NCBI GenBank assembly: GCA_048772705.1
Contig: JBLWGC010000185.1
Coordinates: forward strand, 62,001 to 126,000
Length of the DNA: 64,000 nt
Reading direction: 5' to 3'
Source of the DNA: Leidyana gryllorum EB-2025a
Taxonomy: Eukaryota; Protista; Apicomplexa
Below the pieces are notes generated by a model. The model did not search any database and had not been told where the DNA came from. It saw only the letters and a list, made by a program, of their open reading frames with translations. The position numbers and the translations under genes are program-made. Positions 987 to 59,500 of the stretch are shown here, one piece after another (positions within the stretch are counted from its first letter, which is position 1; every line of letters starts with the position of its first letter).

Positions 987-2819
987 ATGAGTAGCGGTCA
1001 ATTGAAGGTGGGCACTGTCCTCGCCAGTACCCTATCAGGTGGCATTGGATGGCGTGGAAAGCTCCCTTGGCGTATATCTGAGGTGAATGGTGTCTACCAC
1101 ACACGTGTGGCAACCAGGTGTTTGTGTAGGACCTCAAGCACTTTGAGCATATAACTACAGCAAAGGGCTGTCGTCGTAATGTGAAAGGCGTCAATGGTGT
1201 ACTGATGGGAAGGAAGACGTGGGAAAGCTTGCCAAAGAAGCCTCTGCCCGGTCGACGAAATGTAGTTGTGTCAAACAGTCTGGAGCCTTCTGTGGACGAC
1301 AAATATAAGGTTGTCAAGTCTATTGAGGAGGGACTGAGTGTTCTGGAACAGGAAGGAATCAAGACTGTGTATATTACTGGTGAGGCTGACGTGACATTAT
1401 CTAGTGTTTGGTGATTCTGCTCTCTTATGCGCAGGTGGCGGGGCTCTGTACGATGTGGCACACTCGGAGGGGTTGGCTGACAGGGTGTACTGGACGCGTG
1501 TATGTGGTTCTAAGATTAAGACGGATGCCAAGATTGACGTGGAGCACCTGCTGGCGAATTACCACGTGATTGCGATCAGCAAGACGCTGGGTGTGAAGGA
1601 CAAGTTGTCATACGACTTTTGTGTGTTGAAGAAGAGCAGCGAGGCTGACAAGAAACAGACCCTTGAAATGTCGTGGACTCCGCTGGAGGATCCATCTCGT
1701 AGCACATCGATGCCGATTATCCATCCACGACAACCTGGAGGGTTACCTCTGTTGCGTCGGTATAAGCATGATGAGTTTCAGTACCTGACGATTATGGAGG
1801 AGATCCTGGACAAGGGACTGTCAATGGACGATCGGACGGGTGTTGGGACAGTGGCCAAGTTTGGAACGATGATGCGATACGATTTGTCTCAGAGCTTTCC
1901 AATGTTGACGACGAAGCGTGTTTACTGGAAGGGTGTGTTGGTTGAGCTGCTTTGGTTTCTGCAGGGTCGGACGGACGCTAAGTATCTGGCGGAGCGGGAC
2001 GTCCACATCTGGGACGCCAATGGATCGCGGGAGTTCCTTGACGGACGAGGCCTGAAGGATCGAGCGGAGGGCGACTTGGGCCCTGTGTATGGGTTCCAAT
2101 GGCGGCACTTTGGGGCGCCCTACAAAACCTGCAATGACGACTATTCGGTGAGTTGGGGCGATCTGTGTGCCTCGGGCCGGTTTCTCTAAAAGAGACGTTC
2201 CATTGCATATCCGGCGGCAGGGCAAGGGATACGACCAAGTTATGGATGTGATCAACACCATCAAGAAGGACCCGACATCGCGGCGATTGATCGTATCGGC
2301 CTGGAACCCGGCCGCTCTGCACGAGATGGCCCTCCCACCGTGTCATATGATGTGTCAGTTCATGGTGGACCCCAAAGCGAAGGAGTTGTCTTGTCTAATG
2401 TTCCAGAGGTCTGCCGATTGGGGACTGGGCGTACCGTTCAACATTGCGTCGTATGCACTCCTCTGCCGGATAATCGCACAGCAAACGGGTCTCAAAGCGA
2501 AAGAGTTCGTCCACGTCTGTGGAAACGCCCACGTCTACAAGAACCACATAGAGCCCCTCAAGGTGAGAGTCTCTTTGCGCGTCTCCGGCCTATATAGTGT
2601 GTGTGTGTGTGAAATAGGAGCAGCTGACGCGGCTGCCTCGGCCGTTCCCGCAGCTGATAATCGATCCGAAAGTGAAGGTGAGGCCCAATTCTCTCTTCTC
2701 AAATTGACTTCTGCACCATTGTTGCCGCGCAACAGAGTATCGATGAGTACGAACCGAAACACTTCCAATTGGTTGGATATGAGCCGTGGCCGACGATTAA
2801 AATGGATATGGCGGTATAA
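987..2819 (+). CDS. DHFR-TS: Bifunctional dihydrofolate reductase-thymidylate synthase, 6 exons
   Basis: ATG 987. GT-AG introns 1083-1129, 1380-1434, 2148-2220, 2563-2617, 2678-2735 restore the frame. DHFR motifs [15 protein letters not shown] and [11 protein letters not shown] motifs [40 protein letters not shown] and C-terminal MDMAV. Confidence 0.97.
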
Positions 2820-2873
2820 AAAGCTTAGGGGGGGTTGGAAGGTGTGAGAGAGAGAGAGACAGACAGACAGATT

Positions 2874-4466: not shown

Positions 4467-4496
4467 TAAAGTCGCAGCCCGAGTTGTTTAGATCAC

Positions 4497-4567
4497 CGCT
4501 CGCTCGCTCGCTCGCTCGTCTGACGGTCGCTCACTCTCTCACTCACTCTCACTCACTCACTCACTAA
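4497..4567. repeat. (CGCT)n plus (CACT/CTCA)n microsatellite between convergent genes
   Basis: cgctcgctcgctcgctcg followed by actcactctcactcactcactcac. Confidence 0.8.
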
Positions 4568-4579
4568 CTGCCACCGACC

Positions 4580-6529: not shown

Positions 6530-6570
6530 CACAAAAATAGTATTTCACACTGTGTGGGCGGACACTGGGG
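6530..6570. promoter_or_regulatory. Candidate bidirectional micro-promoter (41 bp) with CAAAAAT
   Basis: Spacer between divergent ATGs of MLH1 and the ORC3-like gene. CAAAAAT at 6532-6538, CACACTGTGTG at 6546-6556. Confidence 0.5.
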
Positions 6571-8253: not shown

Positions 8254-8357
8254 AATGGTATTTTGAACGACCCGACCTCCAAACTCCAAACAAACACAGA
8301 CAGAACAGAACTCATTGCCATTATCGATCGCCGCCTATGGGGCGACTCTTCCTTCAC

Positions 8358-9161: not shown

Positions 9162-9200
9162 TCTCCCATAAATATATAACCGTTCCAAAAGAAAAACTAT

Positions 9201-19028: not shown

Positions 19029-19051
19029 GACGTCAGTCAGTCAGTCAGTCA

Positions 19052-20740: not shown

Positions 20741-22956
20741 ATGCGTAGTCACATCTTGCCCTTTGTGTTGCCGCTCGTCCTGGGCGCCGTGTGGGAGGTC
20801 AAGGATCTTCTACCCGTCTTGTCCGCCACTGTGGAAGCGCAAATCGGTGAACGTAAGATCAACACGCCAACCACCACCTTCACTCACCCACTCCAGTCGC
20901 CAAACACCTCCAGGCGGAACCGCATTCCGCACCGCCACGCTTCCAGCAAGAACATCGCAGCCGACTTCGTCAAGAACTCAATGAACTAGTCCGGGAGGTA
21001 TGGCACGCTGAGAATGAATACTCCAGACGAACCACCGGACTGGCCTTGGTTCCTGATGAACTGGTCGCCCAGTCTCCAGTGAAGTTGCGCGATCAAGCAG
21101 GATTTCGGCAACTTCAGGAGGACGATGATGCTTTGCCAGACGACAGCATGCTCCTTTTTGAGCTCGATGCCGAGGGCATATCTAAGATCTTCAACGAGAG
21201 CTTAGCCGCTGCTACCGCTCCCTGTAAGCTCACACAATTGCGCTCACCCAAACTTATCGCCTTTGATAGTGAAATCGCTATACAAGCTCACCAAAGCGCA
21301 AGACGGAGGTGCCGTTAGCGCTTTAGCGTTGAAAGAGTAAGTTGGGTCCACATGAACCACCCTTCCTACGCCTGCCCGAGTCACCTGTCCGATCGTTCTC
21401 ATCTCACACACACGTGTGTGCTCCATGCGTTCCCGGAGACATGATATCGCAGAGATCTGTATCCTCGACCCAAGAAGCTTCTGGAAGGCAGAAGACAACA
21501 GCGGAATGATAGCGGGTTCCCCCTCAAGTTTCAGCTCGGTGACTTCGTGATCATGACATCTGTTGAAAAGGTCATCGCCAATCGACATGCCATGGGCGAA
21601 ATGGCTAGCGCAACCACTGATCATTTCAAGAAGGTGGCTTTCGTGTGGCCTTTCGCCAACCGGTTCGCCGGATTACAGCGGGATGTGCTGCCCATCTATA
21701 ATGACCTTTTGCCGGTCTTACAGGGCACTACTTATAGAGCCCTTTCCGCTTTGATGGAGATGAGCCCGAGACGTATCAATGGTATGACCTTTGTATCAGC
21801 GGCCATGGAGTTGGTAACCTTGCTGACACGGATGCAAAGCATGGGCGATGTGCTGCTTCCGTTGACAGGGGTTTTGCTCACTGAGCTGGAGGAAGGTGCG
21901 TCTGTGATGGAGTCGTACCTTCCATTGCTGGAAGAGTATATTCCTCAAGTACGGCGCTTCCTCCCGACAGTGAAAGAGTTAGATCCTTACTACGGCAAGA
22001 TGGCAGAGGGGATTGATCGTACCCTTGTTGCTGCCCAGCCGGTCTTGCAAGATTTCAAAAAGATGATTGGACCCTACTCCAAGGCATCTCCGAGGATCCG
22101 CAAGCTGATGGAAATTGTCGCTGGTCTCAGCATGGACTTCTCAGACACGATGGAAGAGTATTTGGAGCGTCTGACTCGTGAGGCACCAGCGATATTGGAG
22201 TTTTATGACGACCCTGATGGGTTTGTACCTGTCTTGGCGACGAATCTAATCTCTGTGATTAGACGCAGTGGTCTGCCAGCAAGATTCCCGTCCTTGAGAA
22301 GTTTCATGCCTGAGATCAATGAGATGCGTCCAGCAATGCGTGAATTCTTGACCGGATTACAAGCTCATCTGCCAAAATTGGTGGAAGAGATGATACCTTT
22401 AGCGGCCAGTATGCCTCGTCACGATGGGGCGTTTGAACATCTGAGCGACTTTTTGGTACACGCGAGTATTGCAGGCAGTGCTTTCAACTCGACACTGCTC
22501 CCGTCTTTGACGTCCCTCATGGAAGTTGTCGATCCGTTCATGGACTCGCTCAATGCCCCAGTGATCAATCTGGTGGTGGTTTTGCCGTTGCTCGCAACGA
22601 CTGTGAGCTCTTTGTTATCGACTCTGCCGCGCACGGCTGCGTTATTGCCTGCGGTGTCGCCGCTTATGGCATCACTGCACAACTTGACGGGCCATATCGC
22701 CCCGGTCTTGCCCAGCGTTACGGGGCTGCTGGACGCTGCTGGAGATTGGGAGGATTCTCATTTGAACCGCATGAGGGGTCATCTAGTCGCTGTTTTGAGT
22801 GAGGCACCCCGATTGTTCGGGAAGGAGACAATTGCAATCGTGCCTTTGCCGACGGAATCGACGATTTACGCGAACGTCTCTGGGAAAGCAACGAGTGCGA
22901 CTCGGACGCCAACGACTACATCGACGACGGCGACAAAGGGAGGCGAGAAGAGGTAA
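20741..22956 (+). CDS. Secreted alpha-helical protein with Pro-punctuated amphipathic helices, 4 exons
   Basis: Signal peptide MRSHILPFVLPLVLGA. Introns starting ~20848, 21224-21269 and 21337-21452 join ORFs 20741, 21046 and 21547 in frame. Confidence 0.7.
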
Positions 22957-23512: not shown

Positions 23513-24491
23513 CTACGAACGCAGGTACACAGTCTGAGGGCACTGTGCGGCGCAGCACACACGTGTGTATTTTGAGTAGCTAAACTTCAGCTTACCTTCC
23601 AGGCGTCGATACAGTGCACTCCGAGCCACTGCAAAGTCAGCAAGGCGGGCATCGTGAGATCGACAACGCTGCAGTAGAAATACGGTGTTGCAGAGGGTCC
23701 GAGCACCTACCTGTCGATGCAGAAAAAGACTGTTCCCAGAACCACAAGGGGTAGGAGCGCGAGGTACACAGTGGCTACCCACGACGTCTGGCGCGGACTT
23801 GGTACTATGATGGTCAATGCTGCGTAGGCAGTGTAGAGGCGGAGAGGTGTCCGTGATGTGACTCACTAGCGAGGAGCTGAGCGATCAGCACACATTGAAT
23901 GATCAGACGTCGAACTGGGAATGCAGGGAGGGGCATCAGAATGAGATAGAAACTGCCTTGATTGGGCTTGTATGGTTCTAGAGCGTTGTTTGAGGCGGGA
24001 GAGAGCCGGAGCTTACTCAATAGCTTGAGCTGTGCTGTGAGCCATAAGACGGTGACTGCAGTTCCAACATAGGCTTGATAGAGGGGGCGACCAGGAGGCT
24101 CTTTGTTTCCCTTCAACTGCAAGACCAGGCCTTGTTGTATCGGAACCGCATCATCATTATCTGCAGAGCACACGCGTGTGTGTGTGCGTGTGTATGAGGC
24201 GAAAGTGTCACCTGTGGTGGTGTCTTCAGCTGACGGCATGTTGATAGCTATGTCGTGGTCGCCGGTGTGTCTTCTGTGGCAATGGGTTTGCCATTGGGCG
24301 ACATGGTCATGGTCTACGCGGCCAGCGATCCCAACCCGTTGTTCGGGTAGTAAGACCTGAACATATCCTGGATCAGAATTACGGGGTGTTGGACATATGA
24401 GGCTAGAGAGTACATGTTTATGTAGACGGAATTCGACGGGCTGGACAAAGTCGGAGAGAGGTGCCGACCAGGGTTGGCTGGCCCCATCCAT
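23513..24491 (-). CDS. Hypothetical multi-exon membrane protein
   Basis: ATG 24491. Several GT-AG introns, including 24161-24211 and 23543-23595. Hydrophobic segments. Confidence 0.5.
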
Positions 24492-27702: not shown

Positions 27703-29587
27703 TCAAGGAGAGGTCGCCATCACCGACTGCTGCTCCAGATTGACATTTCGGGACCACGGACGCCCATATATGGTGCACAAGAAGGGGACGCCGATACACA
27801 ATCCGAACCAGAAATAGTAATTGCCAAACAGAGTAGCCTTATGCAACCGGCTCATACTCATCAGTGGGATCTGGCACATCATGATGACAAACATGTATGG
27901 CCTGAACAACCCAAGAGCCACAGACTGCGTAGCACACACGTGTGTGCGTTTGGAATGAGCGAAGGAGACACACGAAGAGTGCCTACCAGGAAGGTCTCGT
28001 GCAGCAATGCAGAGAACATGAAGGTTGCAACGGATGCGACCATCTTATTATTCTGCACAATTGTTATTGTTTGACAGATTGCAATGACATTTATTATGAG
28101 TTTACCTTTGTGGCCAAACTTGGCACGTAGACGTGTCGGAGTAAGAATTCGTGAACAGGTTTGTTCCATTTGCGGGCCAGTTCGTCCCACGTGGTGCAGT
28201 TCCACCAGTCCTGTGGCACAGAAGGGCGTGGAAGAATTTCTTTGTTCTCAGGACTCACATGATAGAACTCGCGATCCCCAAAGTCAGTGATCTCAGCCAA
28301 CATATTGAGGATACATTCGAACATGAAATAGAAGAATAGGAAATCCATGATGAGAAGCGGAACGACCATCCTGATGGAGGGAAGTTTGGGTCAGTGACAG
28401 GATGCCTGATTTTTGCGCTCACCTCGCCCAGGTGTGAAGCATGGAGTACTTGTGGGACTCAGCGAAGACAGGGAGCATTAGATCTGCTGCAACAAGGTAG
28501 ACGAGCATCTGAAAGATAGATTGGGGTAAGAGTTAGCTTGAATTTTGAAGATTACCAGAGTGCCAATGAGGAGAATGGTTTTCTTGAGGAAGTACATAGG
28601 ACGGAAAGGATGGGGTGCCCTGGGGTAGTCGGTCTCATAGACCAATATAGGGGCGAGGAGAAAGCGTGCAAAATCCTTGAGCGTGAGTTTTTCCGCGACG
28701 GAAGAGTCTTCTTCGACTAGGTCAATGCTGGTTGTAGCATAAGAGTGCATCTTCATATAGTGTATCATGGTAACGGAGAGGGCGAAGGTGGAGGGGAAGA
28801 TGGCGAGCGAGTTGCGTCGGACTAGAATGGACACAGTGATGATCATTATGGCCTGAAAGGAGTGTTTGGCGACCGATACGCGGTGCTTTGTCATTAATCC
28901 TTTTAAATAGGCCTGAACGAGACCGAAGGATGTGAATGACCAACAAAAGCAGGCCAGCCACGTGCCCATCAAAATCCAGAACGGCGCAAACGCGGCTCGC
29001 GCCAACTGCGAAGAGGAGTTTGTTTGGGTCGATGAGAGCGAGCCGGCGATGACTTACTGTGCGGTCGAAGAAGTACCCCTTCTCTATCTTGTTATACGTT
29101 GGGTTCGCGATGATATAACAGAGGGAGACGATGTCTGCATTGTAAAGCGAGTTGGGGGCGAGTTGGGGCGAGTTGGGGCGAGTTGGGGGCGAGTTGGGGG
29201 CGAGTTGGGGCGAGTTGGGGCGAGTTGGGGGCGAGTTGGGGCGAGTTGGGGCGAGTTGGGGGCGAGTTGGGGCGAGTTGGGGGCGAGTTGGGGCGAGTTG
29301 GGACGAGTTGGGGGTGAGTGGTGCAGGTGAGTGAGGATTTGACGGGAGTACTTACGAGCGAGCGTCAAGAGTCCGACATAGTTTGATCGTGAGAGGTCCG
29401 AGTCGGGGTCGCAAGAGTCTAGACGAGAGGGTCGAACAGAGCGGACAAAGTTGCCTATTTTGGGTTTAGGCGTGCCTTTGGCGGAGCCCTGTGTTGGGGA
29501 GGCGGGTGCCTTGGAGGAGGCGGTAGAGCTGGTTTCCGCCTCCATACGGAGGCGCGGGCCCTCACGCGGGGTGGTAGCGGAGACCAT
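27703..29587 (-). CDS. MBOAT family sterol/diacylglycerol O-acyltransferase (ACAT/DGAT1 type), multi-exon
   Basis: MKMHSY, FLLAPILVYETDYPR, FGDREFY|DWWN..WNKPVHEFL.RHVY.P, FSALLHE and GNYYFW motifs. Confidence 0.9.
29147..29314 (+). repeat. G-rich minisatellite (CGAGTTGGGG[G])x~16 inside intron 1 (29135-29355) of the MBOAT gene
   Basis: Direct tandem 10/11-bp units. Confidence 0.95.
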
Positions 29588-31295: not shown

Positions 31296-34200
31296 CAAAA
31301 GCTCCCCATCTGAAGGTTCCATCAGTTGCCTCTGTAATCAAAAGTGCGGGAAAATCAGTGCCTTCGCCTAAACATCGACAAAGCGCTGCCTCCTCGCCTC
31401 TCAACCCCCTTCTGTCGCGCCCTGCCCTCTCCAAGCCTCAGCCGCGGAAAACATCCACCTCCTCGGCACCAAAGTCGGGAACAACAGCTACCGCCCCCAC
31501 AGGGCGCACCACCACACCCAACAACCGCCCCCCACTACCGCCTCCCAAGCCGGAGAGAACCGCCTCGGTGCACTCAGCTTCCACCTCCACGAAGCCGCCC
31601 AAAGCACCCAGCCCCAGAAAGGACTCGTCATCCAAATCGTCAATCTCCACCTCCACAGCGCCCACCCGGGGATCCACTTCCACCATCAACCTCACCAAAA
31701 TTGAGATCGCTACACTCCGCACTGTAGAACGCCATCTCAGCGCACTACCGCCCGGCATCGTGGACCCACCTATCAACTCCACTGCCCAGAAAGGCGCATC
31801 CTCGCCCTCCGCGGCCCTCCCGCCCTGGAAGTCGTTGATCAAAGAGAATCCGTCCCCATCGGACCGCTTAACGCTGTTCGCAGCCCACCGCGGAGTGCGC
31901 CTTGGCGCTATAATCGCTATGCAGGCCTGCAACGCACAAAGCATATATATACCCCCTTTGGTCACTGCTTTCCATCGTAACATATTCCAAATGATGTGGT
32001 GGGATCATTACTTCACTCGATCTGTAACCAACGGAATCGATCTGGCATCTGTATACCTTGAAGCTCACAAGGGCGCCATACCTGAAATTGAAGGCTGCTG
32101 GGAACTCTTCAAGTCAAACTATGTCGCGTCCCAAGTCCAAACCAAGGATAGATCACCCAGACTCAAGAAGATTGCACCCACAAAGATCGTTGACATTATA
32201 GCTGAATATTGCCATTTCAGTTTTGAACCAAAAGGGTCATCACAGTATTGGTGGTATCGTGGTCTCTTGCACGAATTGCTCCGAAACACAAAGTATGCGA
32301 ATCTGGATCAATATCCATTTGACTTTCGAGGTTCCGTTGGTATTAACATTTTTCCACCACCTCCGCCTTCCCCCGCCACTTCCAAGTCACAGGGCCGGTG
32401 CGTAATATCTGCAGACAACAATCTCACCAATGTCGGTGCCTATGAGTCATTCTGTGCCTATTACGCCGCTGATGTTGCTGCTTCTGTGCTGAGGGCCCTC
32501 CCACAATTGCCGTCGCCGAAAGGACACACGTGTGTGTTCGCCATTGATGTTCCCACATTAACCTATGCTTTCAACTCTTTGCTTAGTCAATTGATGCGTT
32601 GGCAAGTCGGTGTTGCACAACAACGCTGTAGCCTTCAAGCGCGCCAATCGTCTGCACAAATGCTGACATACTTCCTGTCACGAGGTCCCGATCATGTGTG
32701 GTGCACAAACAGTCTAAAATGTGAGCTGATCTCTACCATCAGACGTTCCATCCGAGTCATGCCGCTCACCGAGGTGCCCTCTCAGCGCTCGTCGATCTGG
32801 TATTATTTCAAAACCCCTAGCGTCCTGAGGATCGTCCTCCAACACCTTAACCTTGATTATCGTGAAAGTATATTGGAACGGGCTAGAGAGGACCTTGGAG
32901 ACCGTGGGCGAAGCGCTAGATGGCACTGGCTCAAACGATTCTTCGAGACTGCGTGCAAGGGTTCTGTGAGTTTTGACGTTGGACTGGACCGGTATCGATT
33001 TGATTTTCGATATTTTGTTCCGACGGCTAATGGCGCTGACTCCACACCCAGTGCCTCCCCACCCATCTGCCGAGACTACCTTCGCCCGATAGCAATTCCT
33101 TTGGATCCCCAGCAACCTGTGAGGAGGAAACAGCTCACAATGCCCTGGCCGATCTCCTTCTTCGTTCATGACGACGGACAGAAGCAGCATAACAGCCGAC
33201 GAGTCACTTGTAGTCCTCAGACCCAGGCCATGAATCGAGGATCTATTGTGGCAGATTGTCTGCTGGTGGGTATCGTTAGCTCCAAGCCGCCTATCAAGAC
33301 TGGTGACGGAGGAATAGCATATGTAGATGTCGAGTTGCTGCGGAGATGTGTCACTCAAGAGCTCGAAACGATGGATATTGATACTGATCCCCACAAAGCG
33401 CCGTTTGAAGTCAAGCAGTTGGCAAAGAATCTTCGGGAAGCGATCAATATGAATGGTGGCAAAGAGGTGTGGCTCAATGGGCCTCCGAAGAATCGGCATA
33501 CAATATGGGTGCCGTTCGAGTTGGACGACCGCAACGCTCCGTTGTGGTTGAGCGAAGCTATTGTCAATACAATCAATGTGGGTGACATTAAAGTTCCGCC
33601 GCCTGACAATTTGCGGTATTGGTGGCTCCGAGGTTTGTGGGGAACGTTATTGCGGCACACCCCCTACGAGAATCTGGATCGACCGCCGATAGATCTTCGG
33701 CAAAATCTGGCCATTTCTCCCCCTTTGGTGGCTCTCTCCCAAAAGAACCATCGAGCTTTCCAGCTGGGCATTGAGTGTGGACACCGCTTTCAGCGCATTG
33801 TCCTCGAAGGGTCGCTTGCAGCCACGTCCACAGCGAAAGCTTTCTCCATAACGCGTCTGCCGCTCCTGAGCGAAGCCGTCAAAGGATGTCTCGCCGCCTT
33901 TAGACAGATTGCCTCCGACACCCGGATTTTGAGCACCGTCATCGAGTGTGCGGAGAAATGTCGCAACTTTTATGAGAGTACCGGTCAATGCCCGACTGAC
34001 AACGTTTATGGGAGGATATCGTCCGCCTGTTTGCCAGTTGAGTCCATGACTGATTACAATTGGCTCGCCTCTGCCCTCTACTGTTGTTTCACACAAGTCA
34101 ACATCGAGCCTCCACTGAAAGGCGGGTTTGACCTCATTTACAAAGTAAATGTGTCAGCCTGGTGGCGTGCGCGGGGTTTCTTCACTCTTCTGCTTCATCT

Positions 34201-36076
34201 CAGTCCCTTTGCCCATTTAGACACGCGACCCTTCGACTTTGGTCTCGAGGCAGCGGCACAAGCGAATAAGGCTGACAGCTCCGACATCAGCGAGTCACAA
34301 TCGGAGAGTTTGGCTAATCAAAGCACTGAGCGACCAGAGGCAGTCTCCCGAGCGGTGGAAAAGGCTCCGACACGCTCGAAAGATGCAGACGTACACAAGC
34401 GTCAAGCTGCCGCGGAAGAAAGAGCTGTTCGGCCCCCCGTCGTGACCCAGGTGACCTCTGGAGAGGCAACTGGAACTGGAACTGGAAACACCGTCACTGG
34501 CTTGTGTCCCAGTCCACCGGTTCCCTCAGAGCCCGTGGCACCAGTGCCCTCACCTTCGGGAACGAGCAATATGTCGCGCATTACCTCCGCGTCTCCGACC
34601 CTTGAGGAGGCCACAGAGGAGTACCGACTATTGGATCCTTCGGGAGACGAGGCGGACAACTTTGTCAATATGGGAATGGATTACGCCTACCGACTCTTAC
34701 GGTCGCTTCCGTTAGCAAAGATTGTCGCTGGCGGCGACCCGGAGGGGGATCAGGAGGCAGATGAGCGGTTTGAAGTGATTAAATCGCAGAAGCCGACCCC
34801 ATCGACGTCACCTCGCAAAGGAACGAAAAGGTTCAACTCTGCCCTGAGAGCTCTCGCCACATATTTTGTTATCGTTTATGGAGGGGATGACGACGAGAGC
34901 GAGGAGTCGAGCCGAGCAGTTGTGGAGCAGGCGTTCGGCACTCTGCTTAAGAGCGCTCAGAGCACGCTGGAGGCTCTCAGAACGACTCAGAAGGTCGCCG
35001 ACTGCAGATCTTTCGCATTGGCGGTGGTACATCGGACACCACCCAAATATTGGAAGTTTGACAATGATCTGAGTGTGACGCCTGATTACTGGCTGCTGAT
35101 GGGATTCTGGAGAATCTTTCTGCGGGGCACTCCGTATCGACATTTGACAACGAAACCAATTGATATGCGTCGGACTGTGAAACGCGGAGGCGTTCGGATT
35201 GTGCGAGTGCTACCGAGACTTACAACTCCGTCACAGGGGTGGTCACAATCCAGCAGATGGGCCGCCGGAAGGTTGTCGGGGCTCTTTGATGTGATGGATG
35301 GGCAACTGGAGTGCACAGGTGCCAAGCTGGTGATTGACGAGGTGACTGCGGGGGAGGGCTGGTCGGCATTCTTCAAGTGGGCCATCAAGGACTCGGGTCG
35401 GATGATGGAGTGGCAATCGAACGAAGGGGGGGACATCGAGGCACTCAGGACATTGTCTAAGAGACTGACTGCATCAGTGAGTTTCCAGGCAGTGGAAGGC
35501 GGTAGTGTGGAGTCTGTGGTCGCCCCCTGGGTGTCGAGAACAAAGTTGGCGTTTGTGGAAGTGATGGTGAAGCAGGTCAAACAATATGATCTGTGCGCAC
35601 TCCGTACAGAGGATGTGAAAGCGTATGTGTGGGTTCGTGCGTTCTGCGAGAGTCTGGTGGTGGACACCCCGTACGAGTCACTGACTGTGAAGCCTCTGGA
35701 CTTTCGAGTGCCACAAGTTGTGCCGGGACTTCAGCCGGCGAGATTTACGGGAATTATGGAGCTCCATAGTGCAGCGGGACCAGCGGACGGGAAAGTAGCG
35801 ATGTCTGTGGGAGTGATCCACAAGTCGTACTACAGCTTATATTATCGAGCACTCGGAAATCTTCGGTTACAACGCGTGGATTGCGATCCGATCGTTTTAC
35901 TGCCCCCGTTACGACCAAGTACAGTGGGACGCCTCTGGAGTACGATCACCGGTCGGACGGCCGGCGACGAACCACCACACACACCAACAGAGTCGTCACC
36001 CTCGAGTACACCGACCAGTGAATCGCCACTTGTGCGAGCTATGAAGTTCTTCTTCCGATCTGGAAGTGCCGTCTGA
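31292..36076 (+). CDS. Large hypothetical protein with a dispersed ~28-aa W..RG...LL..TPY..L...P.D[FL]R repeat
   Basis: 1594-codon ORF with no ATG for ~200 codons and 5-6 copies of the motif. Confidence 0.8.
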   Translation: MTKAPHLKVPSVASVIKSAGKSVPSPKHRQSAASSPLNPLLSRPALSKPQPRKTSTSSAPKSGTTATAPTGRTTTPNNRPPLPPPKPERTASVHSASTSTKPPKAPSPRKDSSSKSSISTSTAPTRGSTSTINLTKIEIATLRTVERHLSALPPGIVDPPINSTAQKGASSPSAALPPWKSLIKENPSPSDRLTLFAAHRGVRLGAIIAMQACNAQSIYIPPLVTAFHRNIFQMMWWDHYFTRSVTNGIDLASVYLEAHKGAIPEIEGCWELFKSNYVASQVQTKDRSPRLKKIAPTKIVDIIAEYCHFSFEPKGSSQYWWYRGLLHELLRNTKYANLDQYPFDFRGSVGINIFPPPPPSPATSKSQGRCVISADNNLTNVGAYESFCAYYAADVAASVLRALPQLPSPKGHTCVFAIDVPTLTYAFNSLLSQLMRWQVGVAQQRCSLQARQSSAQMLTYFLSRGPDHVWCTNSLKCELISTIRRSIRVMPLTEVPSQRSSIWYYFKTPSVLRIVLQHLNLDYRESILERAREDLGDRGRSARWHWLKRFFETACKGSVSFDVGLDRYRFDFRYFVPTANGADSTPSASPPICRDYLRPIAIPLDPQQPVRRKQLTMPWPISFFVHDDGQKQHNSRRVTCSPQTQAMNRGSIVADCLLVGIVSSKPPIKTGDGGIAYVDVELLRRCVTQELETMDIDTDPHKAPFEVKQLAKNLREAINMNGGKEVWLNGPPKNRHTIWVPFELDDRNAPLWLSEAIVNTINVGDIKVPPPDNLRYWWLRGLWGTLLRHTPYENLDRPPIDLRQNLAISPPLVALSQKNHRAFQLGIECGHRFQRIVLEGSLAATSTAKAFSITRLPLLSEAVKGCLAAFRQIASDTRILSTVIECAEKCRNFYESTGQCPTDNVYGRISSACLPVESMTDYNWLASALYCCFTQVNIEPPLKGGFDLIYKVNVSAWWRARGFFTLLLHLSPFAHLDTRPFDFGLEAAAQANKADSSDISESQSESLANQSTERPEAVSRAVEKAPTRSKDADVHKRQAAAEERAVRPPVVTQVTSGEATGTGTGNTVTGLCPSPPVPSEPVAPVPSPSGTSNMSRITSASPTLEEATEEYRLLDPSGDEADNFVNMGMDYAYRLLRSLPLAKIVAGGDPEGDQEADERFEVIKSQKPTPSTSPRKGTKRFNSALRALATYFVIVYGGDDDESEESSRAVVEQAFGTLLKSAQSTLEALRTTQKVADCRSFALAVVHRTPPKYWKFDNDLSVTPDYWLLMGFWRIFLRGTPYRHLTTKPIDMRRTVKRGGVRIVRVLPRLTTPSQGWSQSSRWAAGRLSGLFDVMDGQLECTGAKLVIDEVTAGEGWSAFFKWAIKDSGRMMEWQSNEGGDIEALRTLSKRLTASVSFQAVEGGSVESVVAPWVSRTKLAFVEVMVKQVKQYDLCALRTEDVKAYVWVRAFCESLVVDTPYESLTVKPLDFRVPQVVPGLQPARFTGIMELHSAAGPADGKVAMSVGVIHKSYYSLYYRALGNLRLQRVDCDPIVLLPPLRPSTVGRLWSTITGRTAGDEPPHTPTESSPSSTPTSESPLVRAMKFFFRSGSAV

Positions 36077-42545: not shown

Positions 42546-45223
42546 CTATCCGGAAGAAGATGAGATTGTGTAACTGCTTGTGTCGGAATCAAAACTTGAC
42601 GAACCTTCGGATCGGGATGTCGCATCCGAGTGACTCCCGCTGTACGAGCCTGAAGAAGAGGAATAGAAAGAGGATGAACCCGAAAGAGAACTGTCAAAAG
42701 AGTCGGAAGTGCGCCGTGGGTTCCGCTCATGTCCTGCTACGTCTGAAACCTCATTGCTGGAGGCCGGAGTGGACGCAAACGCAACAGTTTCTCTCTTGCT
42801 CGTCTGAGTATTTGGCTGGCGGTTGTCTGCCACTCCATCAGCGGCTTTTGGTGCTGCAGGAGGTCCCGCAGGAGCGTTGAATAATGCCGCACCAGGTGGA
42901 GGTGGCAAATGATCTGGCCAAATCCTGAACAATCCAGTGGGATTGTCGCGTTCGAGCGGAGTTCTCCGGCCATCATTCTGCATTGAGGTACTCGCGTCTT
43001 GGAGAGCCGTAATGTCTGCGGCATCCGTATAGATCTCAGGTGCTTGGCACGCCTTGTTGCGTCCAAAGCCTTTGCTCTCCCGTTCCTGGTCGGGAGTCTC
43101 AAACTTGGGGAATTGTGCCACGAGGAGCTCGGCCAAGTACTGTCTAACGCTCGTCCGTTCATCTAACCATCTCAACCCGAAACCTGCCATGTCCAGCTTG
43201 GCGCGAATGCCCTCGGCAACTAAACGGAAAGATTCCGGCATCAGTGGAGGAGAGTTGGAGTACCAATAACAAAGGGCTGCTGGGCTATCCAATGTCATGT
43301 GAAGTTGTGCTGACGCTAAGGTATCAGAAAAGCCTTCCATACTATCGTCCTTTAATATTGGAGTCAAATACTCTTTCTGAATCACGTCTGCACTGTCAAT
43401 GGTTTTGGCTACCAGATCTTTGGTGCTCTCCTGCGATCACATTTGGGTGTCATCGAGCCCACCGACAGTTCTCTACTCACCTCAATTAGCTTTATAAGTT
43501 CTACGAACTTGTCTGTGACTTGCTGCATCACTGCTCGGCTCTCTTCTTGGTGCCGTTTGGCGGAGGCTTCCATTTGCTGTCTGAAATGTGCTATTCCCTG
43601 TTTGTATCCCTTGAGTTTTGGCGATAGGTACGTCCGTATAGTGAATGTGATCCAGCGCATCGCTGGCTCTCCACTGAGAACATCGTGACCAAAGTGACGG
43701 CCGCCTTTGACGCAACACCGAGCGCATATGCCGATTGACTCGCAAGTCTTGCACCAAAATTGAACGGGTTCGGACAAATGGACCATACATCTGTAATCTA
43801 TCTTGTCAGCCTTTTCGGATCCCATTTGCCATCTCTTTGGCATCAGAAGGCCAACTTGACGAAGGTCTTTCAGCGTCATCGTACTCGCCATGTCGGGTTC
43901 CTGGCCGTTAGGAGCTTTCAACGGCACTTTCTGCGAGCCGATGGCTGATGGGGCGGTCCTGGGTGGTGATCCCATCGCCATATGATTTGCAGCTGAGGCC
44001 CCGTAGAGGAAGTTGATGTTGCCTGGGCCAGGACCACTGGGATAAGGCTCTTGTGGTCCGCCTCCCATGGCAGCACCGCCTCCTGATCTTTTCTGATCTG
44101 CGTAGGACATTGCAGTGGAGCCGATGATCTCGGGGTCACCCATTTCATTTATGCGGACTTGAGCAATTCGATGTTGGAGCCAATCTGAGCTCAAACCGCT
44201 TTCCCCATGTACCGCCTCTGTGCAGCAGGGACACATGAACTCCTGGCAAGCATAACAAAACTGGAGAGGCTGATTTGATCGAGTTCTGCAAATAGCGCAA
44301 TACGTCGGAGGCCGGCTGAAGGCGTTGTGAAGCTTGGATGACATGGGTGTCACACGATTGTATCGAACGAAACCAGGAATATTATTGGCATTCGCTGGGT
44401 TGAGAGGCCGTGCGTTGGGCGGCAAAGGGGGGCATCCAGTCAGTGCTGATCTCAACTGCGGGGTCAGCCGCATCACTTTCCCGCAAATAGGGCAAGCAAT
44501 AACACCTGTGCGGAACATTGTCAGGTCTCCCAAGGCAAAAGTCTTGGCAGAGCAGCTCAGGCATAGCCCATGGCCACAAGGGAGAGTTGCGTAGCTGTCA
44601 CAAGGACGCGTGCAAACATTGCATTTCACACCTTTGTGAGGAGGCTTTGGGGGCCAAGGGTTAAGGGCTGCCCCTTCACTCAGCGAGGAGGGCATTGCTG
44701 AGGTATCTGCAGCCTGACTCGTTGGCAGTTGAGACGTTGGCTGTGAGGATGCTGGCATGGAAGAAGGTTCCCCACTTGGTGGAACGGAGGATGTCTGAGG
44801 TTCCGACTGTTCTGTTGTCGTCTGCGGTGCTGATGAGCCTTCCCGGATGACTTTCTTCTGAATTTCATCAGAGTCTGAGGACGAGCTCCTGGATTTGTTG
44901 CCCTTCTTTCGCTGGCTCGGAAATGCTGAGATTTCGATGCTCGACTCGGACGTTGGTGTAGATGATGATGATGAACTAGAGCTGAGAGACGCAGATCGTG
45001 TTGGGAGTCGCGGTTTGGAGGTCGTCAGGGGGCGTGCAGACCTCGCGGCCCGTACAACGGATCTCGAGACAGTGCCAAAGCGGCTGCGTTGGAGGGACGC
45101 GCGATTCTTCCTGGGGGGTTGTGGAGGGCCATATGACACGTTTCTGGGTGGTTTCTGCTCATCATTGTGAATAGGCTTAGGTCCATTGTCCACACTGGAA
45201 TTCGTGTCTATCAGGGTTGACAT
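42546..45223 (-). CDS. RING - B-box - B-box - coiled-coil (TRIM/RBCC-like) E3 ligase, 2 exons
   Basis: RING CNVC..LPCGHGLCLSC..CPIC, B-box1 CAIC..FCYACQEFMCPCC..VH..H, B-box2 CMVH..FWCKTC..ICARC..HFGHDV, then a heptad helix. Intron ~43429-43480. Confidence 0.8.
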
Positions 45224-46984
45224 TCCAGCGCCACAAGCAAATTGTCAATCACTTTGCGTTCGTCAAAACCGAAATACGCCAAGGCATCCAATATGGCGCC
45301 TGCACAGCGGTACTTGGAGAAACAAATCTGCAGGAGGGATTTCAATTGAGCGAAGCACACACGTGTGTCGTCGGTTACATTTTGAGTTGGCTTTTGTGCA
45401 CTTCGAGCCAAAAGGAATCGGCTCGTTTGACTATGGATGTTGTCGGGCACGTTTTCGTCCTGAACACCGGTCAGAGCTTTCACAAAGTCATCCTGCGCGT
45501 TGCCGACACAGCAGCCATTCGCACCGGGAATTGTGAACATATCCATATCATTTCCCGAATCACCGCAAGCCATGACCTGACAAGGGTGTGAAGGGGCTTG
45601 CAAGCTCTGGATCGTACCTGTTTCGGCTCAGCACCATAAAGGTTTGCCAGGAACTCAATTGAAGTCCGTTTGCCTCCAGAGGGGGGAAGAACATCCAGGT
45701 ATCTGTAGAAATAGCAAATTCAGTTGCAAGGGAACCGTTTTTCCTTCTCCGCTCACTTCCACTCGCCAGGACCTGACATCAGGATGTGGTACTTCTCCAA
45801 AGACTTGGAAAGGAACTGACAACCGCGTAAAATCTGTGGCTATGGGAGGCTTTACCTCCAATGAAGCCTCAATGGTAGGTTTGAGGGTCACGAGATCATT
45901 GATATTCACTGAAACCGAGACCCGATAGGGGTCATGCCAGACCGAGCCATTGATAAAAGCGTCTGGCAAGATTGTCTGAGAGATTAGATTGGTCAGATCG
46001 AACTTTCAAGGAGCGGTCGCTCACAACCCACCCGGATGATTTCCTCAGCTTCCAATCGGTCGATTTCTGCTTCCATTTTGTGTCGCCAGACGCCGTGGAG
46101 GCGAGCGTGATACCTGGTGGGACACCAGGAGGGTCCCTCCAAGTCAGCATCTTGAATAGTTTCATCAAAATTCTCCTCCTTGTATCCAGGAGCGGCTAAA
46201 TATCGTTTTCTATCGATTGAGGGGATGTGTGAGTGGTCGGGCGATGGGTCGGTGTCGACGGGGAAGGTATATATCTCAGTGCCAACGCCACAGATGGCAT
46301 AATCTGGACGAAGAAGGTTGTTGGCCTTGGCGCCCTTGAGGAAGTCCTTGAGGTTGCGACCCGTAGAATAGATCTGAATGACCGCTGATCCCTGGGTGGA
46401 GGCGTCCGAACTCACCAGCGAAGAGCCTCTAAACTTGTGATGACGCATCCAATGATCGTTAAATCGTCTGAGCGCTTCGTCATCCCCGAGTAGGGTGCCG
46501 TCCAGATCGGTGACCAGCATCATTTTGGGGCCTGCGAGTCACGAGGAAGTGAGACTCAGTCGATCAGAGGACGGGTATTTGAAATCGGTGCCCTTTTGGA
46601 CCCGATACTGACCTTTGACTGCGGTGAGTTTACCACCACAGAGTGTATAGATGTGCGGTTCAGAGTGATCGGTGGTGATAGAGTGAGGAAGTGAGATGAC
46701 ATAGTTCTTAGTGCCAAAGTCCGCAGGAGGATTGTCCCACTGAGACTTTGTGAAGTTACACATGACAAATTCAAGAGTCGAGTGGACATCAGAGATAACA
46801 GTGCTTTGCCATCGTGGCTCTCCAAGTGAGGTGCATTTCTACGATAGATAACAAATACCACATCATCAACGGAAACATCACTAACTTGTAATATACTGTC
46901 CTCCCATTGGCCGTCCTGCCGTTTGGTGTAATGTATCACGGCCGGGTCCCACGCCGACCGATAGAAGATGACTACTGAGGGCAT
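45211..46984 (-). CDS. Sucrose-phosphatase-like HAD hydrolase with an N-terminal starch-binding (CBM25/26-like) module, multi-exon
   Basis: HAD motifs LVTDLDGTLL, YSTGR, PDYAICGVGTEIY and ACGDSGNDMDMF. N-terminal VIFY..W..AVIHY...W...EFV.....QWDN....NY. In-frame splice ~46532-46612. Confidence 0.8.
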
Positions 46985-49194: not shown

Positions 49195-49236
49195 CGCACG
49201 TGTGTGTCAGGCGATGATGAACAGGTGAAAATGCGT

Positions 49237-52961: not shown

Positions 52962-53085
52962 TATCGTATCATTCGGCTAAACAACGAACATATACATTGA
53001 ACGTATACACTTCCCCCTCGCTCGCTCGCTCGCTGTAACCGACCTCCAAAATCTCGACATCAGACACAGGGGGCTGGCTGGCTGG

Positions 53086-54469: not shown

Positions 54470-54502
<33 letters not shown>

Positions 54503-56448: not shown

Positions 56449-56507
56449 CAAATAGTGTACAAACAACCAAAGGTGCACGCGCGTGGTGCGCACTTGAGCT
56501 TTGATGC

Positions 56508-59500
56508 TCATGCAGTATTCGCAAGGCTTTCCAGAAACTTCTCGTACCGCACTGATACTTCTATCACAGTGTCAGAAAACTCACGAGGACAACGACTCCT
56601 CAGCTCCCGTAAATACTGCTGTGCTCGACTCGTATCGATCGCATAAGGATCCTCCCTACAGTACACCTCAACTCCCAAATCCATCTCCAAATGCCGATCC
56701 TCCAAGCTGTCCATTAGCAACGCACGACTTAGCTTACTTCGCCCGCTCTCAAACGATTGAGCGTCGGCTGCTGTCGCCAATACGCGGTCACGGGGCTCAG
56801 CCCGCATTGGGTCCGCTAATGAACTCAATAACCCCTGTAGCCCCAGGAAGAACGGCGGACATTCACAAACCGCCACATCCTCTACCAACACTCGACCACC
56901 CACAGAAAATACCCATGGCCCGCATGCTTTAGCCTCACGTCGACGGTCACTTATTTTCAAAAGTGTGTCGATTCCTCCTGTCGTGTGCAGCAGATAATCC
57001 CATCTGTGACAGTCCTCAGTTGTCAACAATACTGGAGTCTGACGGACAGCCACATCAAATGGCTTGCAATCAGCCGCCTTTGCCGCTGACCCATCACCAC
57101 CACCCTGTATTCTCTGTAGCCGGCTATCCACAGTCTGCAGCACTGCCCCAAAAGCGCCCGTGATCTGATATACCATCAAAGACGTCATATAAGCCGTCCT
57201 TTCACGACTGATTTCGCCACTCTTGATGCATAAATACAGGCACATCTGCGAAATAGCAATAGCACACACGTGTGTGTCTCGTTCCAAATGTCCATTCTAC
57301 TTACCTGAAGACATGCGAGCTGCTTTTGACGGCTCAACCGACGCATAGACGCAACCAATTCGTGACACTTGAGCTTCCAAAGCTTTTCGTCTCCTCCTTC
57401 AGTTAACATGTCTTCCATCTTCCGATGTACCAAATCGATCTCTATCTGTCCTTGAAGGTGCAGATAGATCAATGTTGAGGGAGGAAGATTCCGAACCGCA
57501 CTCAATTGCCCGTCCTGTACTTCCCAATAGTGCTGCATCACCTTTACATCCTTCTTGTCTTTCAGCTTCTGAATTTGAGACATCAGGAGCGCTACGCTTC
57601 CCAGCACCGGCTCGGAATTTCCATAATCTCGAACCACGGGATAGACGAAGTTCTTGAGAATCCCCGATAGACATTCCAGAACGGCTTTGCGGGACAGTTG
57701 CGCATAAAGACTCATCTGACTTTGAGCCACCACAGATTCCGTCCCTGTTTCAGCTTCTTTCACCGTCACCATGGCTCGTTTCAGTGTCTGTCGCCATGCC
57801 AGAGGCACTAAACGAGCGGTGGCATTCTCGCGGAGTGACCGCTCCACCTCGGAGTCGTCTTCATTATTCACGGTGTGCTGTGCCAACAGGACCAAACTTG
57901 TCAGCTGGCGAATGACAATGATCTCATAGATCCCGTCTGGACCACCCTCCGGAGCAAGATCTGATTGGTTCCGAGGTTCTCGGCAGGTCCTGAGCAACGA
58001 TGCCAACCAGTCCCGCGGGGGAAGCACCAGGGCCAAGGGTAAGAGGGACAGCATGACAAAGTGTGCTCTCAGCCGACGACTCAACGGATGTGACCAAAAG
58101 GCCAATGATACATCACTCAAGAGCGATGCCAACGAATTGTCCTTGGGGCAGTGCGCGATACACAGCTTCCACAATGCGATGATTGCATTTTCAACAGAAA
58201 CATCACTGGGATCTTTGATGTGAGCAGTGATGTACTCGTCGGCGAGTGGGGCTAAGATCTGTCTCAAGTTCAGATCTGGCAGCACAGATACGGTGGTTAA
58301 GGCTTCCAATAGAGTAGTGCGCTCCGCAATGCCAGCCCCACTGTCCGACTTGAGGCGAACCATCGCCCATCGGGCCAAATTGTCGTGAGGGAGCGAATCC
58401 AATGTCAGTGAGGGATCTCTGAAGCGTCCTTTGGAATGTAGGATCGAATAGTGACTGACTCACCGATAGCATCGCAGGACTTGGTGCAGCACTCCCAAGA
58501 AATGTATACCAACTGGAGAGGCATTCTGCATAGAAACTTTGGTCGCTTCTTCTGCAGCAGGACCGGCAGAAGCGCCCGCCCGGAGTGAGAATGCTTTGCG
58601 GGTATTGGCGAGCCAGAAGATCAATGCTTTCCCGGCGAGTTCTCTCTGCGGTCCGACTGGGATCTTCGCCATTGTGAAGAAGACTTGAATGGGCTGTTGA
58701 AGATGATTTTTGAGATCACCCGGTTGCTGCAGGAGCGATGGCAGAATGGTCTGAATGCCCAACAGCGAGAATGCGCCGAGGATAGGACAGAGTTTCTCGC
58801 TTTCCACAGCGAAACTGCCCAAATTCAATTCCATCAAAGCGTTGAGTTGAGAGAGGGTCAAAGACCGCACTTTGTTGCGATCATTGACATCCAGTGAGAT
58901 TGCCCCACCCAACAATTGGCACCGCGCCCAATACCTCCAGGCTGCGCTCTGTGCGACTGGAGCCATCGCGTCCATCGCTTCGTCCATATCTTGAACAGTG
59001 GCTGGACAAAGTGATTAAAAGAGCGCAGCTGAAAAGACTCACCAGAACCCAGTTGGGTGAGACGGGGCAGTACAGCAGCGGTCCAGATAGCTCCGTGATC
59101 AGCCTGGTCTTTCAAGTTGATTCCCTTTGCCGTTTCTGCGATTTTACGCAGTAACGCGGGGTCGAAGGTGGTATTGAGGATGTGGAGATCAGCATAGGCC
59201 AGAATGACGTACTGCAGGGGCGCAGCAGAGTCTTGGGCGATGAGCAAAAGTACGTCTCTGATCGCTCCCGCCTCCGCGGGATGACTGAACCCTTTGAGAG
59301 CGGCTTCGCTGGCGATGCCCAGCGTTCCGGCGGCCAGGATGAGGCGGCGGGGTGGTGATTCGGGTCCAGTGTGGAAGGCAACGTTTCTCTGTCGCAGATT
59401 GCAGATAGGCTGTACAGCGTGTCGCCGGAGGCCTCCAAAGGCAGCGACTGCGTCAAAACAGGTGTTGGCGTACTCGGGTACCCCGTTGACGAGGTGGATG

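What the first reader, a model, noticed from the sequence alone, without database searches (positions are those of the whole stretch)
1100..57275. Orientation-specific palindromic motif ACACACGTGTGTGCT recurring inside introns of unrelated genes
Seen directly: the exact 15-mer lies in predicted introns at 21408-21422 (+ gene), 23554-23568, 27931-27945, 45354-45368 and 57261-57275 (- genes, read AGCACACACGTGTGT on +). A variant CACACGCGTGTGCT is at 24167-24180 and the core CACACGTGTG is in DHFR intron 1 (1100-1109). The core is self-complementary, yet the asymmetric GCT tail always points toward the 3' splice site (6-30 nt from the AG) in transcript orientation. Introns are a small fraction of the window. 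The other copies I saw lack the GCT tail (32524 in a CDS; a partial one at 49195 next to an ATG). Inference: a strand-aware intronic element, such as an RNA hairpin/splicing signal, an RNA-binding-protein site, an intronic E-box/ApiAP2-type site serving neighbouring promoters, or the relic of an intron-generating element.
Basis: partly seen in the sequence, partly recalled or inferred. Interest (0 to 1): 0.8.

Follow-up and report, generated by a model that had tools for sequence, protein, structure and literature searches.

The report
Symmetric non-coding DNA palindrome, not strand-aware
The repeated 15-letter word is real and far from chance, but across the genome it is one half-extended form of a symmetric 12-16-letter palindrome that sits in either orientation in introns, in spacers next to start codons and in repeat elements, so it looks like a docking site for a paired DNA-binding protein, not a strand-reading splicing signal.

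Summary
The five exact copies are at the stated coordinates. None is expected by chance.

Genome-wide (15.5 Mb, gregarine-type apicomplexan) there are 49 exact 15-mers. The 12-letter palindromic core occurs at 175 sites. The three matched CA/GT-junction palindromes occur at 26, 15 and 3 sites, so this is not microsatellite noise.

The "asymmetric GCT tail" comes from asking for an exact 15-mer:
- The last T is not preferred.
- A G-C/T flank is favoured on either side independently.
- Seven sites, including window 27931, are perfect 16-mers.

Orientation is not fixed. I counted about 17-20 sense and 9 antisense intronic copies, and about 8 versus 9 in introns flanked by long ORFs. Antisense copies lie in Pfam-verified PLD and Dim1 genes. 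Position within the intron is not fixed either.

About half or more of the sites are in ~50-nt introns, which make up roughly 5-9% of the DNA. Others lie 11-45 nt upstream of ATGs, once between divergent genes, and in three repeat families.

In the window, only 27931 is a homology-backed CDS intron. 57261 is a predicted one. 21408 and 23554 are 5'-leader sites, and 45354 is ambiguous.

A second motif (GTGTCTC/GAGACAC) co-occurs strongly (P~1e-9).

Best reading, about 0.5: a dimeric transcription-factor site, probably ApiAP2 CACACA-type. No RNA data were listed.

The parts
21408..21422 (+). Exact 15-mer (core 21408-21419). It sits in a canonical 116-nt GT..AG unit (21337-21452) upstream of the first ATG of the 21.5-23.0 kb ORF, so it is a 5'-leader site. 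GGAGACA follows 12 nt downstream.
23554..23568 (-). Exact 15-mer, 57 nt upstream of the Cpn10 start codon (23497, minus strand). It lies inside a possible 53-nt 5'UTR intron (23543-23595) or in the promoter.
24167..24180 (-). Variant copy with a CGCG centre, in a predicted 51-nt intron (24161-24211) between ORFs of 121 and 114 codons.
27932..27947 (.). Perfect 16-letter palindrome, which contains the 15-mer at 27931-27945. It lies in the 62-nt intron 27925-27986 of a DGAT1-like MBOAT gene (minus strand).
45354..45368 (-). Exact 15-mer in a 51-nt in-frame stretch (45328-45378) at the 3' end of the sucrose-phosphatase-like gene. Intron or coding cannot be told. It lies 131 nt upstream of the ATG (45223) of the next gene, a RING/B-box protein.
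57261..57275 (-). Exact 15-mer in a canonical 59-nt GTAAGT..CAG unit (57246-57304) between ORFs of 385 and 245 codons. The downstream ORF begins with ATG at the acceptor. No homologues were found to test whether this is one gene or two.
1100..1109 (.). 10-letter core in the 47-nt first intron of DHFR-TS (1083-1129).
32525..32534 (.). 10-letter core inside the 1594-codon ORF 31292-36076, apparently coding.

Best explanation
The element is a two-fold symmetric DNA word. Its core is the 12-letter palindrome ACACACGTGTGT, with a preferred G then C/T on either side, up to a perfect 16-mer. There are about 175 core copies in 15.5 Mb.

It is kept out of coding sequence and sits in the small non-coding fraction of this very compact genome:
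- short introns, in either orientation (at least half of the sites);
- spacers and 5' leaders 11-57 nt from start codons, including one divergent gene pair;
- the upstream parts of three repeat or tandem gene families.

I infer that it is the binding site of a dimeric sequence-specific DNA-binding protein. The most plausible candidate is an ApiAP2 factor of the CACACA-binding type, with two inverted half-sites around an ACGT centre. It would act together with nearby GAGAC-type sites as a small cis-regulatory module.

Shown: symmetry, specificity, distribution, orientation-independence and the partner motif. Inferred: protein binding and a role in transcription.
For: Specificity:
- 175 core sites against 26, 15 and 3 for the (TG)3(CA)3, (CA)3(TG)3 and (GT)3(AC)3 palindromes.
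- On the contig, 7 of 9 ten-letter cores and 9 of 11 eight-letter cores extend fully.
- The exact 15-mer occurs 49 times, and 253 times with up to 1 mismatch. The reversed control gives 0 and 33.

Symmetry:
- After the core, G is 59% at +1 and C/T is 71% at +2, on both sides.
- The two sides are independent: 14 paired against 17.8 expected at +1, and 7 against 12 at +2.
- Seven sites are perfect 16-mers.

Orientation and position:
- Copies lie in both orientations within Pfam-verified genes: sense in an AGC kinase, antisense in PLD and Dim1.
- There is no positional rule inside introns: relative position averages 0.47, p=0.63.
- Motif-bearing introns are not nearer to gene 5' ends than other introns.

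Non-intronic copies:
- They lie 11-45 nt upstream of ATGs in both orientations. One lies between divergent ATGs at 25 and 43 nt.
- In a diverged repeat family, the 22 nt around the core are invariant while the rest is about 50% identical.
- A 2.6-kb tandem family carries a variant core 22 nt before its ATG.

Partner motif: GTGTCTC/GAGACAC lies within 25 nt of 12 of 43 sites, against 2.8% expected (P~1e-9). Spacing and orientation are flexible.

Context:
- The genome has at least 4 AP2 domains above the Pfam cut-off.
- CACACA is bound by four AP2 domains in each of C. parvum and P. falciparum (PMC4117751).
- WGAGACG is a known T. gondii promoter element (PMC2688925).
Against: - No binding protein, no expression data and no TSS data are available. 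No RNA run was listed.
- Many copies lie in introns hundreds of codons from any start codon, which is not where promoter sites are expected.
- The word is unusually sharp for a transcription-factor site: the ratio of exact to one-mismatch copies is about 1:4.
- A 21-kb sample of G. niphandrodes shows no extended copies, although the sample is too small to decide.
- Because the core is a palindrome, the RNA carries the same word in either orientation, so orientation-independence does not by itself exclude an RNA-level role.
- My intron calls rest on splice consensus, ORF continuity and homology only.
Confidence: 0.5

Rival explanations
1. RNA-level element of introns and leaders. The self-complementary word in the pre-mRNA would be bound by an RNA-binding protein, or would pair with another copy (12-bp duplex). 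It would mark about 1% of introns for regulated splicing or retention, like a small splicing regulon.
For: - At least half of the sites are in short introns that make up only about 5-9% of the DNA.
- Several 'upstream of ATG' copies sit in canonical GT..AG units that could be 5'UTR introns.
- A palindrome reads the same in either orientation, so antisense copies are compatible.
- The self-duplex of the core is predicted at -18.9 kcal/mol.
I did not test this.
Against: - There is no fixed distance to the 5' or 3' splice site.
- Some copies have no splice donor nearby (L017, L005), and one lies between divergent start codons (L002).
- The core hairpin is weak (-1.9 kcal/mol), and the flanks do not covary as a stem would.
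- The symmetric half-site flank preference is a hallmark of double-stranded recognition.
- Most introns lack the word, so it is not a general splicing signal.
Confidence: 0.2
2. Selfish or insertional origin. The copies would be relics of a very short palindromic mobile element (REP/MITE-like or introner-like), or would be spread from LTR-type repeats. Such an element would have seeded introns and spacers, and would have little present function.
For: - The word is sharp, with few degenerate copies.
- It occurs in three repeat families. In one it directly abuts a perfect GTAAGT, followed by GTGTCTCC and CCGG repeats.
- The only intron of the Dim1 gene is motif-bearing, and it is absent from Dim1 of G. 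niphandrodes and of a closer Logan relative.
Against: - Outside the repeat families, about 70 examined copies share no sequence beyond the core and the short partner motif, and their spacing to the splice sites is variable.
- No target-site duplications are evident at the intron borders.
- Neutral relics would not keep 12-16 letters perfect while everything around them has diverged.
- In the diverged repeat family the word is the best-conserved block, which points to constraint.
- The Dim1 case is a single gene in an intron-rich genome compared with intron-poor relatives.
Confidence: 0.15
3. Other DNA-level role of a symmetric site, not classical promoter control. Examples are a general chromatin, boundary or roadblock factor site separating tightly packed transcription units, a recombination hotspot, or an origin-associated site.
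For: - The same symmetry and distribution evidence as for the best explanation applies.
- Copies lie deep inside genes and at stop-to-start spacers of about 30 nt (L010, L012).
Against: - Nothing specific supports any of these roles.
- 175 sites is about one per 90 kb, too sparse for a general boundary between genes that are about 1.8 kb long.
Confidence: 0.1
4. Chance or microsatellite by-product of CA/GT-rich introns.
For: CA and GT runs are the commonest 7-letter words in predicted introns.
Against: - The matched junction palindromes with the same arms are 7 to 58 times rarer.
- No shuffle reached the observed counts.
- The partner motif co-occurs strongly.
Confidence: 0.03

Closest known systems
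ApiAP2 CACACA-type binding motifs (Cryptosporidium parvum, Plasmodium falciparum; PMC4117751)
   Same: The half-site is a CACACA-type word. The organism is an apicomplexan with AP2-domain genes. TGCAT, another ApiAP2 word, lies about 60-100 nt upstream of the element in one repeat family.
   Different: Here two half-sites are fused head to head around an ACGT centre into a sharp 12-16-letter palindrome. Most copies lie in introns, not upstream regions. No binding has been measured.
E-box / G-box (CACGTG) sites of bHLH and bZIP dimers
   Same: A CACGTG centre, two-fold symmetry, and flank preferences that extend the site symmetrically.
   Different: No HLH domain was detected in this genome, although that search was uninformative because its controls were also silent. 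Of 34 CACGTG sites on the contig, only those with the full CA/GT arms are over-represented.
Toxoplasma gondii WGAGACG promoter element (PMC2688925)
   Same: The partner motif GGAGACAC shares the GAGAC core. It works in either orientation and lies 2-3 nt from ATGs in three loci.
   Different: This concerns only the partner motif. The resemblance is by sequence alone, and it is also frequent in introns.
Introner elements (intron-generating transposons of Micromonas, Aureococcus, fungi, dinoflagellates)
   Same: A shared sequence recurs in many introns of unrelated genes. One motif-bearing intron (Dim1) is absent from two relatives.
   Different: Introner copies are alike over their whole length and carry their own splice sites. 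Here only 12-16 letters are shared, at variable positions, and copies also occur outside introns.
Intronic splicing enhancers of small regulons (e.g. the yeast Mer1 enhancer)
   Same: A conserved word in about 1% of introns.
   Different: Such enhancers are strand-specific and placed at a fixed distance from a splice site. This word is symmetric and unplaced.

Membership tests
   Among the 49 exact 15-mers, about 17-20 are sense and 9 antisense in introns (binomial p about 0.06-0.17). In introns flanked by long ORFs the split is about 8 versus 9. Antisense copies lie in Pfam-verified PLD and Dim1 genes. The residual bias matches the intron T>A composition.
   The flank preference is the same on both sides. 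After GTGTGTGC the next base is T 7, G 7, C 4, A 3. Seven sites are perfect 16-mers.
   Over 34 confident introns, the distance to the 5' end is 7-71 nt and to the 3' end 4-96 nt. Relative position averages 0.47 (p=0.63). Closeness to the AG follows from the ~50-nt intron length.
   Copies lie 11-45 nt upstream of ATGs without a donor nearby, between divergent ATGs, after a stop codon, in two long ORFs and in three repeat families.
RNA hairpin | Stable stem with covarying flanks | tested here: not met
   The core folds at -1.9 kcal/mol. Flank positions on the two sides pair less often than expected under independence.
Dimeric transcription-factor site (ApiAP2 CACACA-type / E-box-like) | Two-fold symmetric site with independent half-site flanks | tested here: met
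Dimeric transcription-factor site (ApiAP2 CACACA-type / E-box-like) | Orientation-independent occurrence in non-coding DNA, including promoter-proximal DNA, with clustering of partner sites | tested here: met
   However, motif-bearing introns are not enriched near gene 5' ends.
Dimeric transcription-factor site (ApiAP2 CACACA-type / E-box-like) | A cognate DNA-binding protein encoded and shown to bind | not testable with these tools
   AP2 domains are present, at least 4 above the cut-off. HLH was not detected, but that search was uninformative. Binding needs PBM, EMSA or DAP-seq.
Dimeric transcription-factor site (ApiAP2 CACACA-type / E-box-like) | Conservation under divergence | tested here: inconclusive
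   The word is invariant in a diverged repeat family. No orthologous non-coding DNA from a close relative was available. The G. niphandrodes sample (21 kb) has none.
Introner / intron-generating element | Copies similar over the whole intron, with own splice sites and target-site duplication | tested here: not met
   No shared 9-letter words beyond the motifs were found outside the three repeat families. Spacing is variable and no duplications are seen at the borders.
Introner / intron-generating element | Motif-bearing introns are lineage-specific gains | tested here: inconclusive
   The Dim1 intron is absent in two relatives. That is one gene only, and the relatives are generally intron-poorer.
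Microsatellite junction by-product | Matched CA/GT junction palindromes equally common | tested here: not met
   175 against 26, 15 and 3

The most novel reading that the evidence does not exclude
In this ultra-compact genome, short introns would be kept, or even gained, as carriers of regulatory DNA. The palindrome plus its GAGAC partner would form a portable module shared by promoters, LTR-type repeats and about 1% of introns, possibly spread by the repeats. Some introns would then exist mainly to house protein-binding sites for neighbouring or host genes.
Probability: 0.12. Interest if true: 0.65.

Novelty: new member of a known kind. Interest (0 to 1): 0.35.

Why it matters
Almost nothing is known about gene regulation in gregarines. 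A sharp, abundant, symmetric word with a defined partner motif is a concrete candidate cis-element. It can be tested directly against the few AP2 domains this genome encodes.

If it does bind a factor, it would show how a genome with spacers of tens of bases finds room for regulatory DNA, namely in its ~50-nt introns.

The finding as originally framed, a strand-reading intronic signal, would have been more surprising, but it does not survive the genome-wide test.

Tried and rejected
- **RNA evidence.** No RNA run was listed for a 6-kb stretch holding three copies, so read laying was not used and no intron is RNA-verified.
- **Literature.** The core occurs in no relevant paper. No paper on gregarine intron motifs was found.
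- **Larger genome sample.** I worked with the whole 134-kb contig, short of a 2-kb gap, plus 94 small loci. Genome-wide class counts are therefore samples, not a census.
- **ORF-only intron calling.** It was too noisy at 53% GC. A naive donor survey was swamped by a repetitive giant ORF. I replaced both with a combined score of donor, acceptor, length and codon usage. This still has false positives: 96 calls on reversed sequence against 188 real ones.
- **5'-end enrichment of motif-bearing introns.** Rejected.
- **3'-splice-site proximity as a rule.** Rejected.
- **Rfam on 12 repeat-family loci.** Only two tRNAs were found, and no RNA family covers the motif.
- **HLH domain search.** Silent, but so were its controls, so it is uninformative.
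- **One gene or two at 57261.** No homologues were found.
- **Intron versus coding at 45354.** The alignment to sucrose-phosphatase structures is undecided.
- **Local clustering.** The contig has 7 core sites in 134 kb. After allowing for the number of windows scanned, this is not clearly significant.
- **Spliced models.** They were searched exon by exon by reference only.
- One script holding typed RNA strings was turned back unrun. I repeated it with sequences taken by coordinate from the window.
- **U2 lead.**
Full report
**1. Observation**

The exact 15-mer is at the five stated places: one on the plus strand and four on the minus strand. None of 100 dinucleotide-preserving shuffles gave a single match. 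The 10-letter core occurs 7 times against 0.05 expected. The variant at 24167 and the partial copy at 49195 are as described.

The window is part of a 134-kb contig of a 15.5-Mb assembly. Earlier notes of this scan call the organism a gregarine-like apicomplexan. A Dim1 search agrees: the best hits are cockroach and beetle gregarines at 63-71% identity, so it is not G. niphandrodes itself. Introns are short, median about 50 nt, with GTAAGT/GTGAGT donors and CAG acceptors. Most of them lack the motif, so it is not a general splicing signal.

**2. Is it more than CA/GT noise?**

Genome-wide counts:

| Word | Sites |
|---|---|
| Exact 15-mer | 49 (24 plus, 25 minus); reversed control 0 |
| 12-letter palindromic core | 175 |
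| (TG)3(CA)3 | 26 |
| (CA)3(TG)3 | 15 |
| (GT)3(AC)3 | 3 |

The last three are the other palindromes that can be built from the same CA and GT arms.

On the contig the word is all-or-none. Of 34 CACGTG sites, 11 have the 8-letter form, 9 the 10-letter form and 7 the 12-letter form. With up to one mismatch the 15-mer has 253 matches against 33 for the control.

**3. The tail is not asymmetric**

In the one-mismatch list, the base after GTGTGTGC is T 7, G 7, C 4 and A 3 over the same contigs. So the final T carries no information.

I built an unbiased set of 44 core sites, namely all sites on contigs C2-C92 with repeat duplicates removed. In this set the flank read outward is G at +1 (59%) and C or T at +2 (71%), equally on both sides. 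The two sides are statistically independent, or even slightly anti-correlated: 14 paired against 17.8 expected at +1, and 7 against 12 at +2. Seven sites are perfect 16-letter palindromes, among them the window copy at 27931.

The "GCT tail" is therefore the one-sided form of a symmetric flank preference. The lack of covariation argues against a stem, RNA or cruciform, beyond the core. The core alone folds at only -1.9 kcal/mol.

**4. Orientation and position**

I fetched 3 kb around all 49 exact copies and 0.8 kb around 37 further core sites. I scored candidate introns on both strands by donor, acceptor, length, open frames and codon usage.

Among the exact 15-mers, about 17-20 intronic copies are sense and 9 are antisense. 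Among introns flanked by long ORFs on both sides the split is about 8 to 9.

Host strands were checked by Pfam:
- an AGC kinase (sense);
- phospholipase D (antisense);
- the rRNA dimethylase Dim1 (antisense).

The remaining 2:1 excess is what composition predicts. Sense-strand T is 32% and A is 20% in introns.

In 34 confident introns the core starts 7-71 nt from the 5' end and ends 4-96 nt from the 3' end. Relative position averages 0.47 (p=0.63). Motif-bearing introns are not closer to gene 5' ends than other predicted introns.

**5. Where the copies are**

Of the 44 unbiased sites, my hand tally of the calls gives:
- about 23-25 in short introns;
- 3-6 in spacers or promoters;
- 4-5 in repeat elements;
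- the rest ambiguous.

Two exact copies appear to lie in long ORFs. Predicted introns make up at most 9-10% of the contig, and probably about 5% after false positives are allowed for. So introns are enriched about ten-fold over a uniform spread.

Non-intronic copies are real:
- L017, L005, L036, L043 and L004 have the word 11-26 nt upstream of a first ATG with no consensus donor nearby.
- L002 has it between divergent ATGs at 25 and 43 nt.
- L010 and L012 have it in stop-to-start spacers.

Three repeat families carry it just upstream of an ATG:
- In the first, the 22 nt around the core are invariant while the rest is about 50% identical.
- The second is a 2.6-kb tandem family.
- The third combines the core with GTGTCTCC and CCGG repeats next to GTAAGT.

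Outside these families the copies share nothing beyond the motifs.

**6. The window copies re-read**

| Site | Context | Evidence |
|---|---|---|
| 27931 | True CDS intron of a DGAT1-like gene; the downstream exon starts at DGAT1 residue 420 | |
| 1100 | True DHFR intron | |
| 57261 | Canonical 59-nt unit; no homologues to confirm one gene or two | |
| 23554 | 57 nt upstream of the Cpn10 ATG | |
| 21408 | The 'upstream exon' has no ATG, so a 5' leader | |
| 45354 | In frame and stop-free; 131 nt upstream of the next gene's ATG | |

So "introns of unrelated genes" is only partly right. Both 21408 and 23554 could be 5'UTR introns or promoter DNA.

**7. A partner motif**

GTGTCTC or its complement lies within 25 nt of 12 of 43 unbiased sites. 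The rate in motif-free predicted introns predicts 2.8% (P about 1e-9). The partner occurs in either orientation at spacings of 0-30 nt and sometimes overlaps the core. GGAGACAC sits 2-3 nt before an ATG in L002, L010 and L017. It resembles the T. gondii WGAGACG promoter element (PMC2688925).

**8. Interpretation**

Several features are what a site for a dimeric DNA-binding protein looks like:
- a two-fold symmetric word with independent half-site flanks;
- no orientation rule and no placement rule;
- exclusion from coding DNA;
- presence at start-codon-proximal spacers and in repeat-family upstream regions;
- flexible pairing with a second short motif.

CACACA is the most redundantly bound ApiAP2 word in both C. 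parvum and P. falciparum (PMC4117751). This genome encodes at least four AP2 domains above the Pfam cut-off. I therefore favour an ApiAP2-type, or otherwise E-box-like, cis-regulatory site, at about 0.5.

The main weaknesses are the many copies deep inside genes, the unusual sharpness of the word, and the total lack of RNA or binding data.

An RNA-level role cannot be excluded (about 0.2), because a palindrome reads alike in both orientations and nearly all of this genome is probably transcribed. An insertional origin is less likely (about 0.15), given the unique flanks. It is kept alive by the repeat families and by the Dim1 intron, which is absent from two relatives.

**9. Verdict**

The finding is real and specific, but ordinary in kind: a candidate cis-regulatory palindrome of a poorly studied lineage. 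The feature that made it look special, strand-awareness in introns, comes from a small sample, from requiring the exact 15-mer, and from intron base composition.

Noticed in passing
L027 (C185:~57-59 kb, just upstream of the window); L094, L095: The Dim1 rRNA dimethylase gene has a single 45-nt intron that carries the palindrome. Dim1 of Gregarina niphandrodes and of a closer unnamed Logan relative (71% aa identity) is intronless.
   Followed up: partly
L062, L063, L089 (C8 and C82, period about 4750 bp); L077, L088: A repeat family, tandem and inverted, carries the core next to GTAAGT-like words, GTGTCTCC/GGAGAC inverted repeats and CCGGCCGG runs. It is probably a retroelement terminal region.
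   Followed up: partly
L034, L035, L042, L044, L008, L041: A ~650-bp repeat family, possibly solo LTRs (L042 lies among tRNA genes). The 22 nt around the core are invariant, a TGCAT box lies about 60-100 nt upstream, and an ATG lies about 35 nt downstream.
   Followed up: partly
L096-L102 (C35:231-255 kb): A tandem gene family with a period of about 2.6 kb and at least 7 copies. It has a variant core (AGACAC arm) 22 nt upstream of its ATG and a GTCTCC...GGAGAC inverted repeat just before it.
   Followed up: partly
L022 (C169:~141 kb): A predicted 172-nt intron holds four tandem degenerate copies of the core followed by GCTCGG.
   Followed up: no
L069 (C33:~30.1 kb): Three tandem 26-nt units each contain a near-copy of the core.
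   Followed up: no
window 45328-45378: A 51-nt stretch with a weak GTAACC donor and a good CAG acceptor is in frame and stop-free. It could be read either as an intron or as 17 codons of the sucrose-phosphatase-like protein.
   Followed up: partly
window 56508-56513 and 45211-45223: The stop of one gene abuts or nearly abuts the ATG of the next on the same strand. This matches the earlier notes on near-zero spacers.
   Followed up: no
contig C185, predicted introns: CA and GT dinucleotide runs are the commonest 7-letter words in predicted introns. Some introns consist largely of GT-rich repeats with GTGTCTCC units.
   Followed up: no
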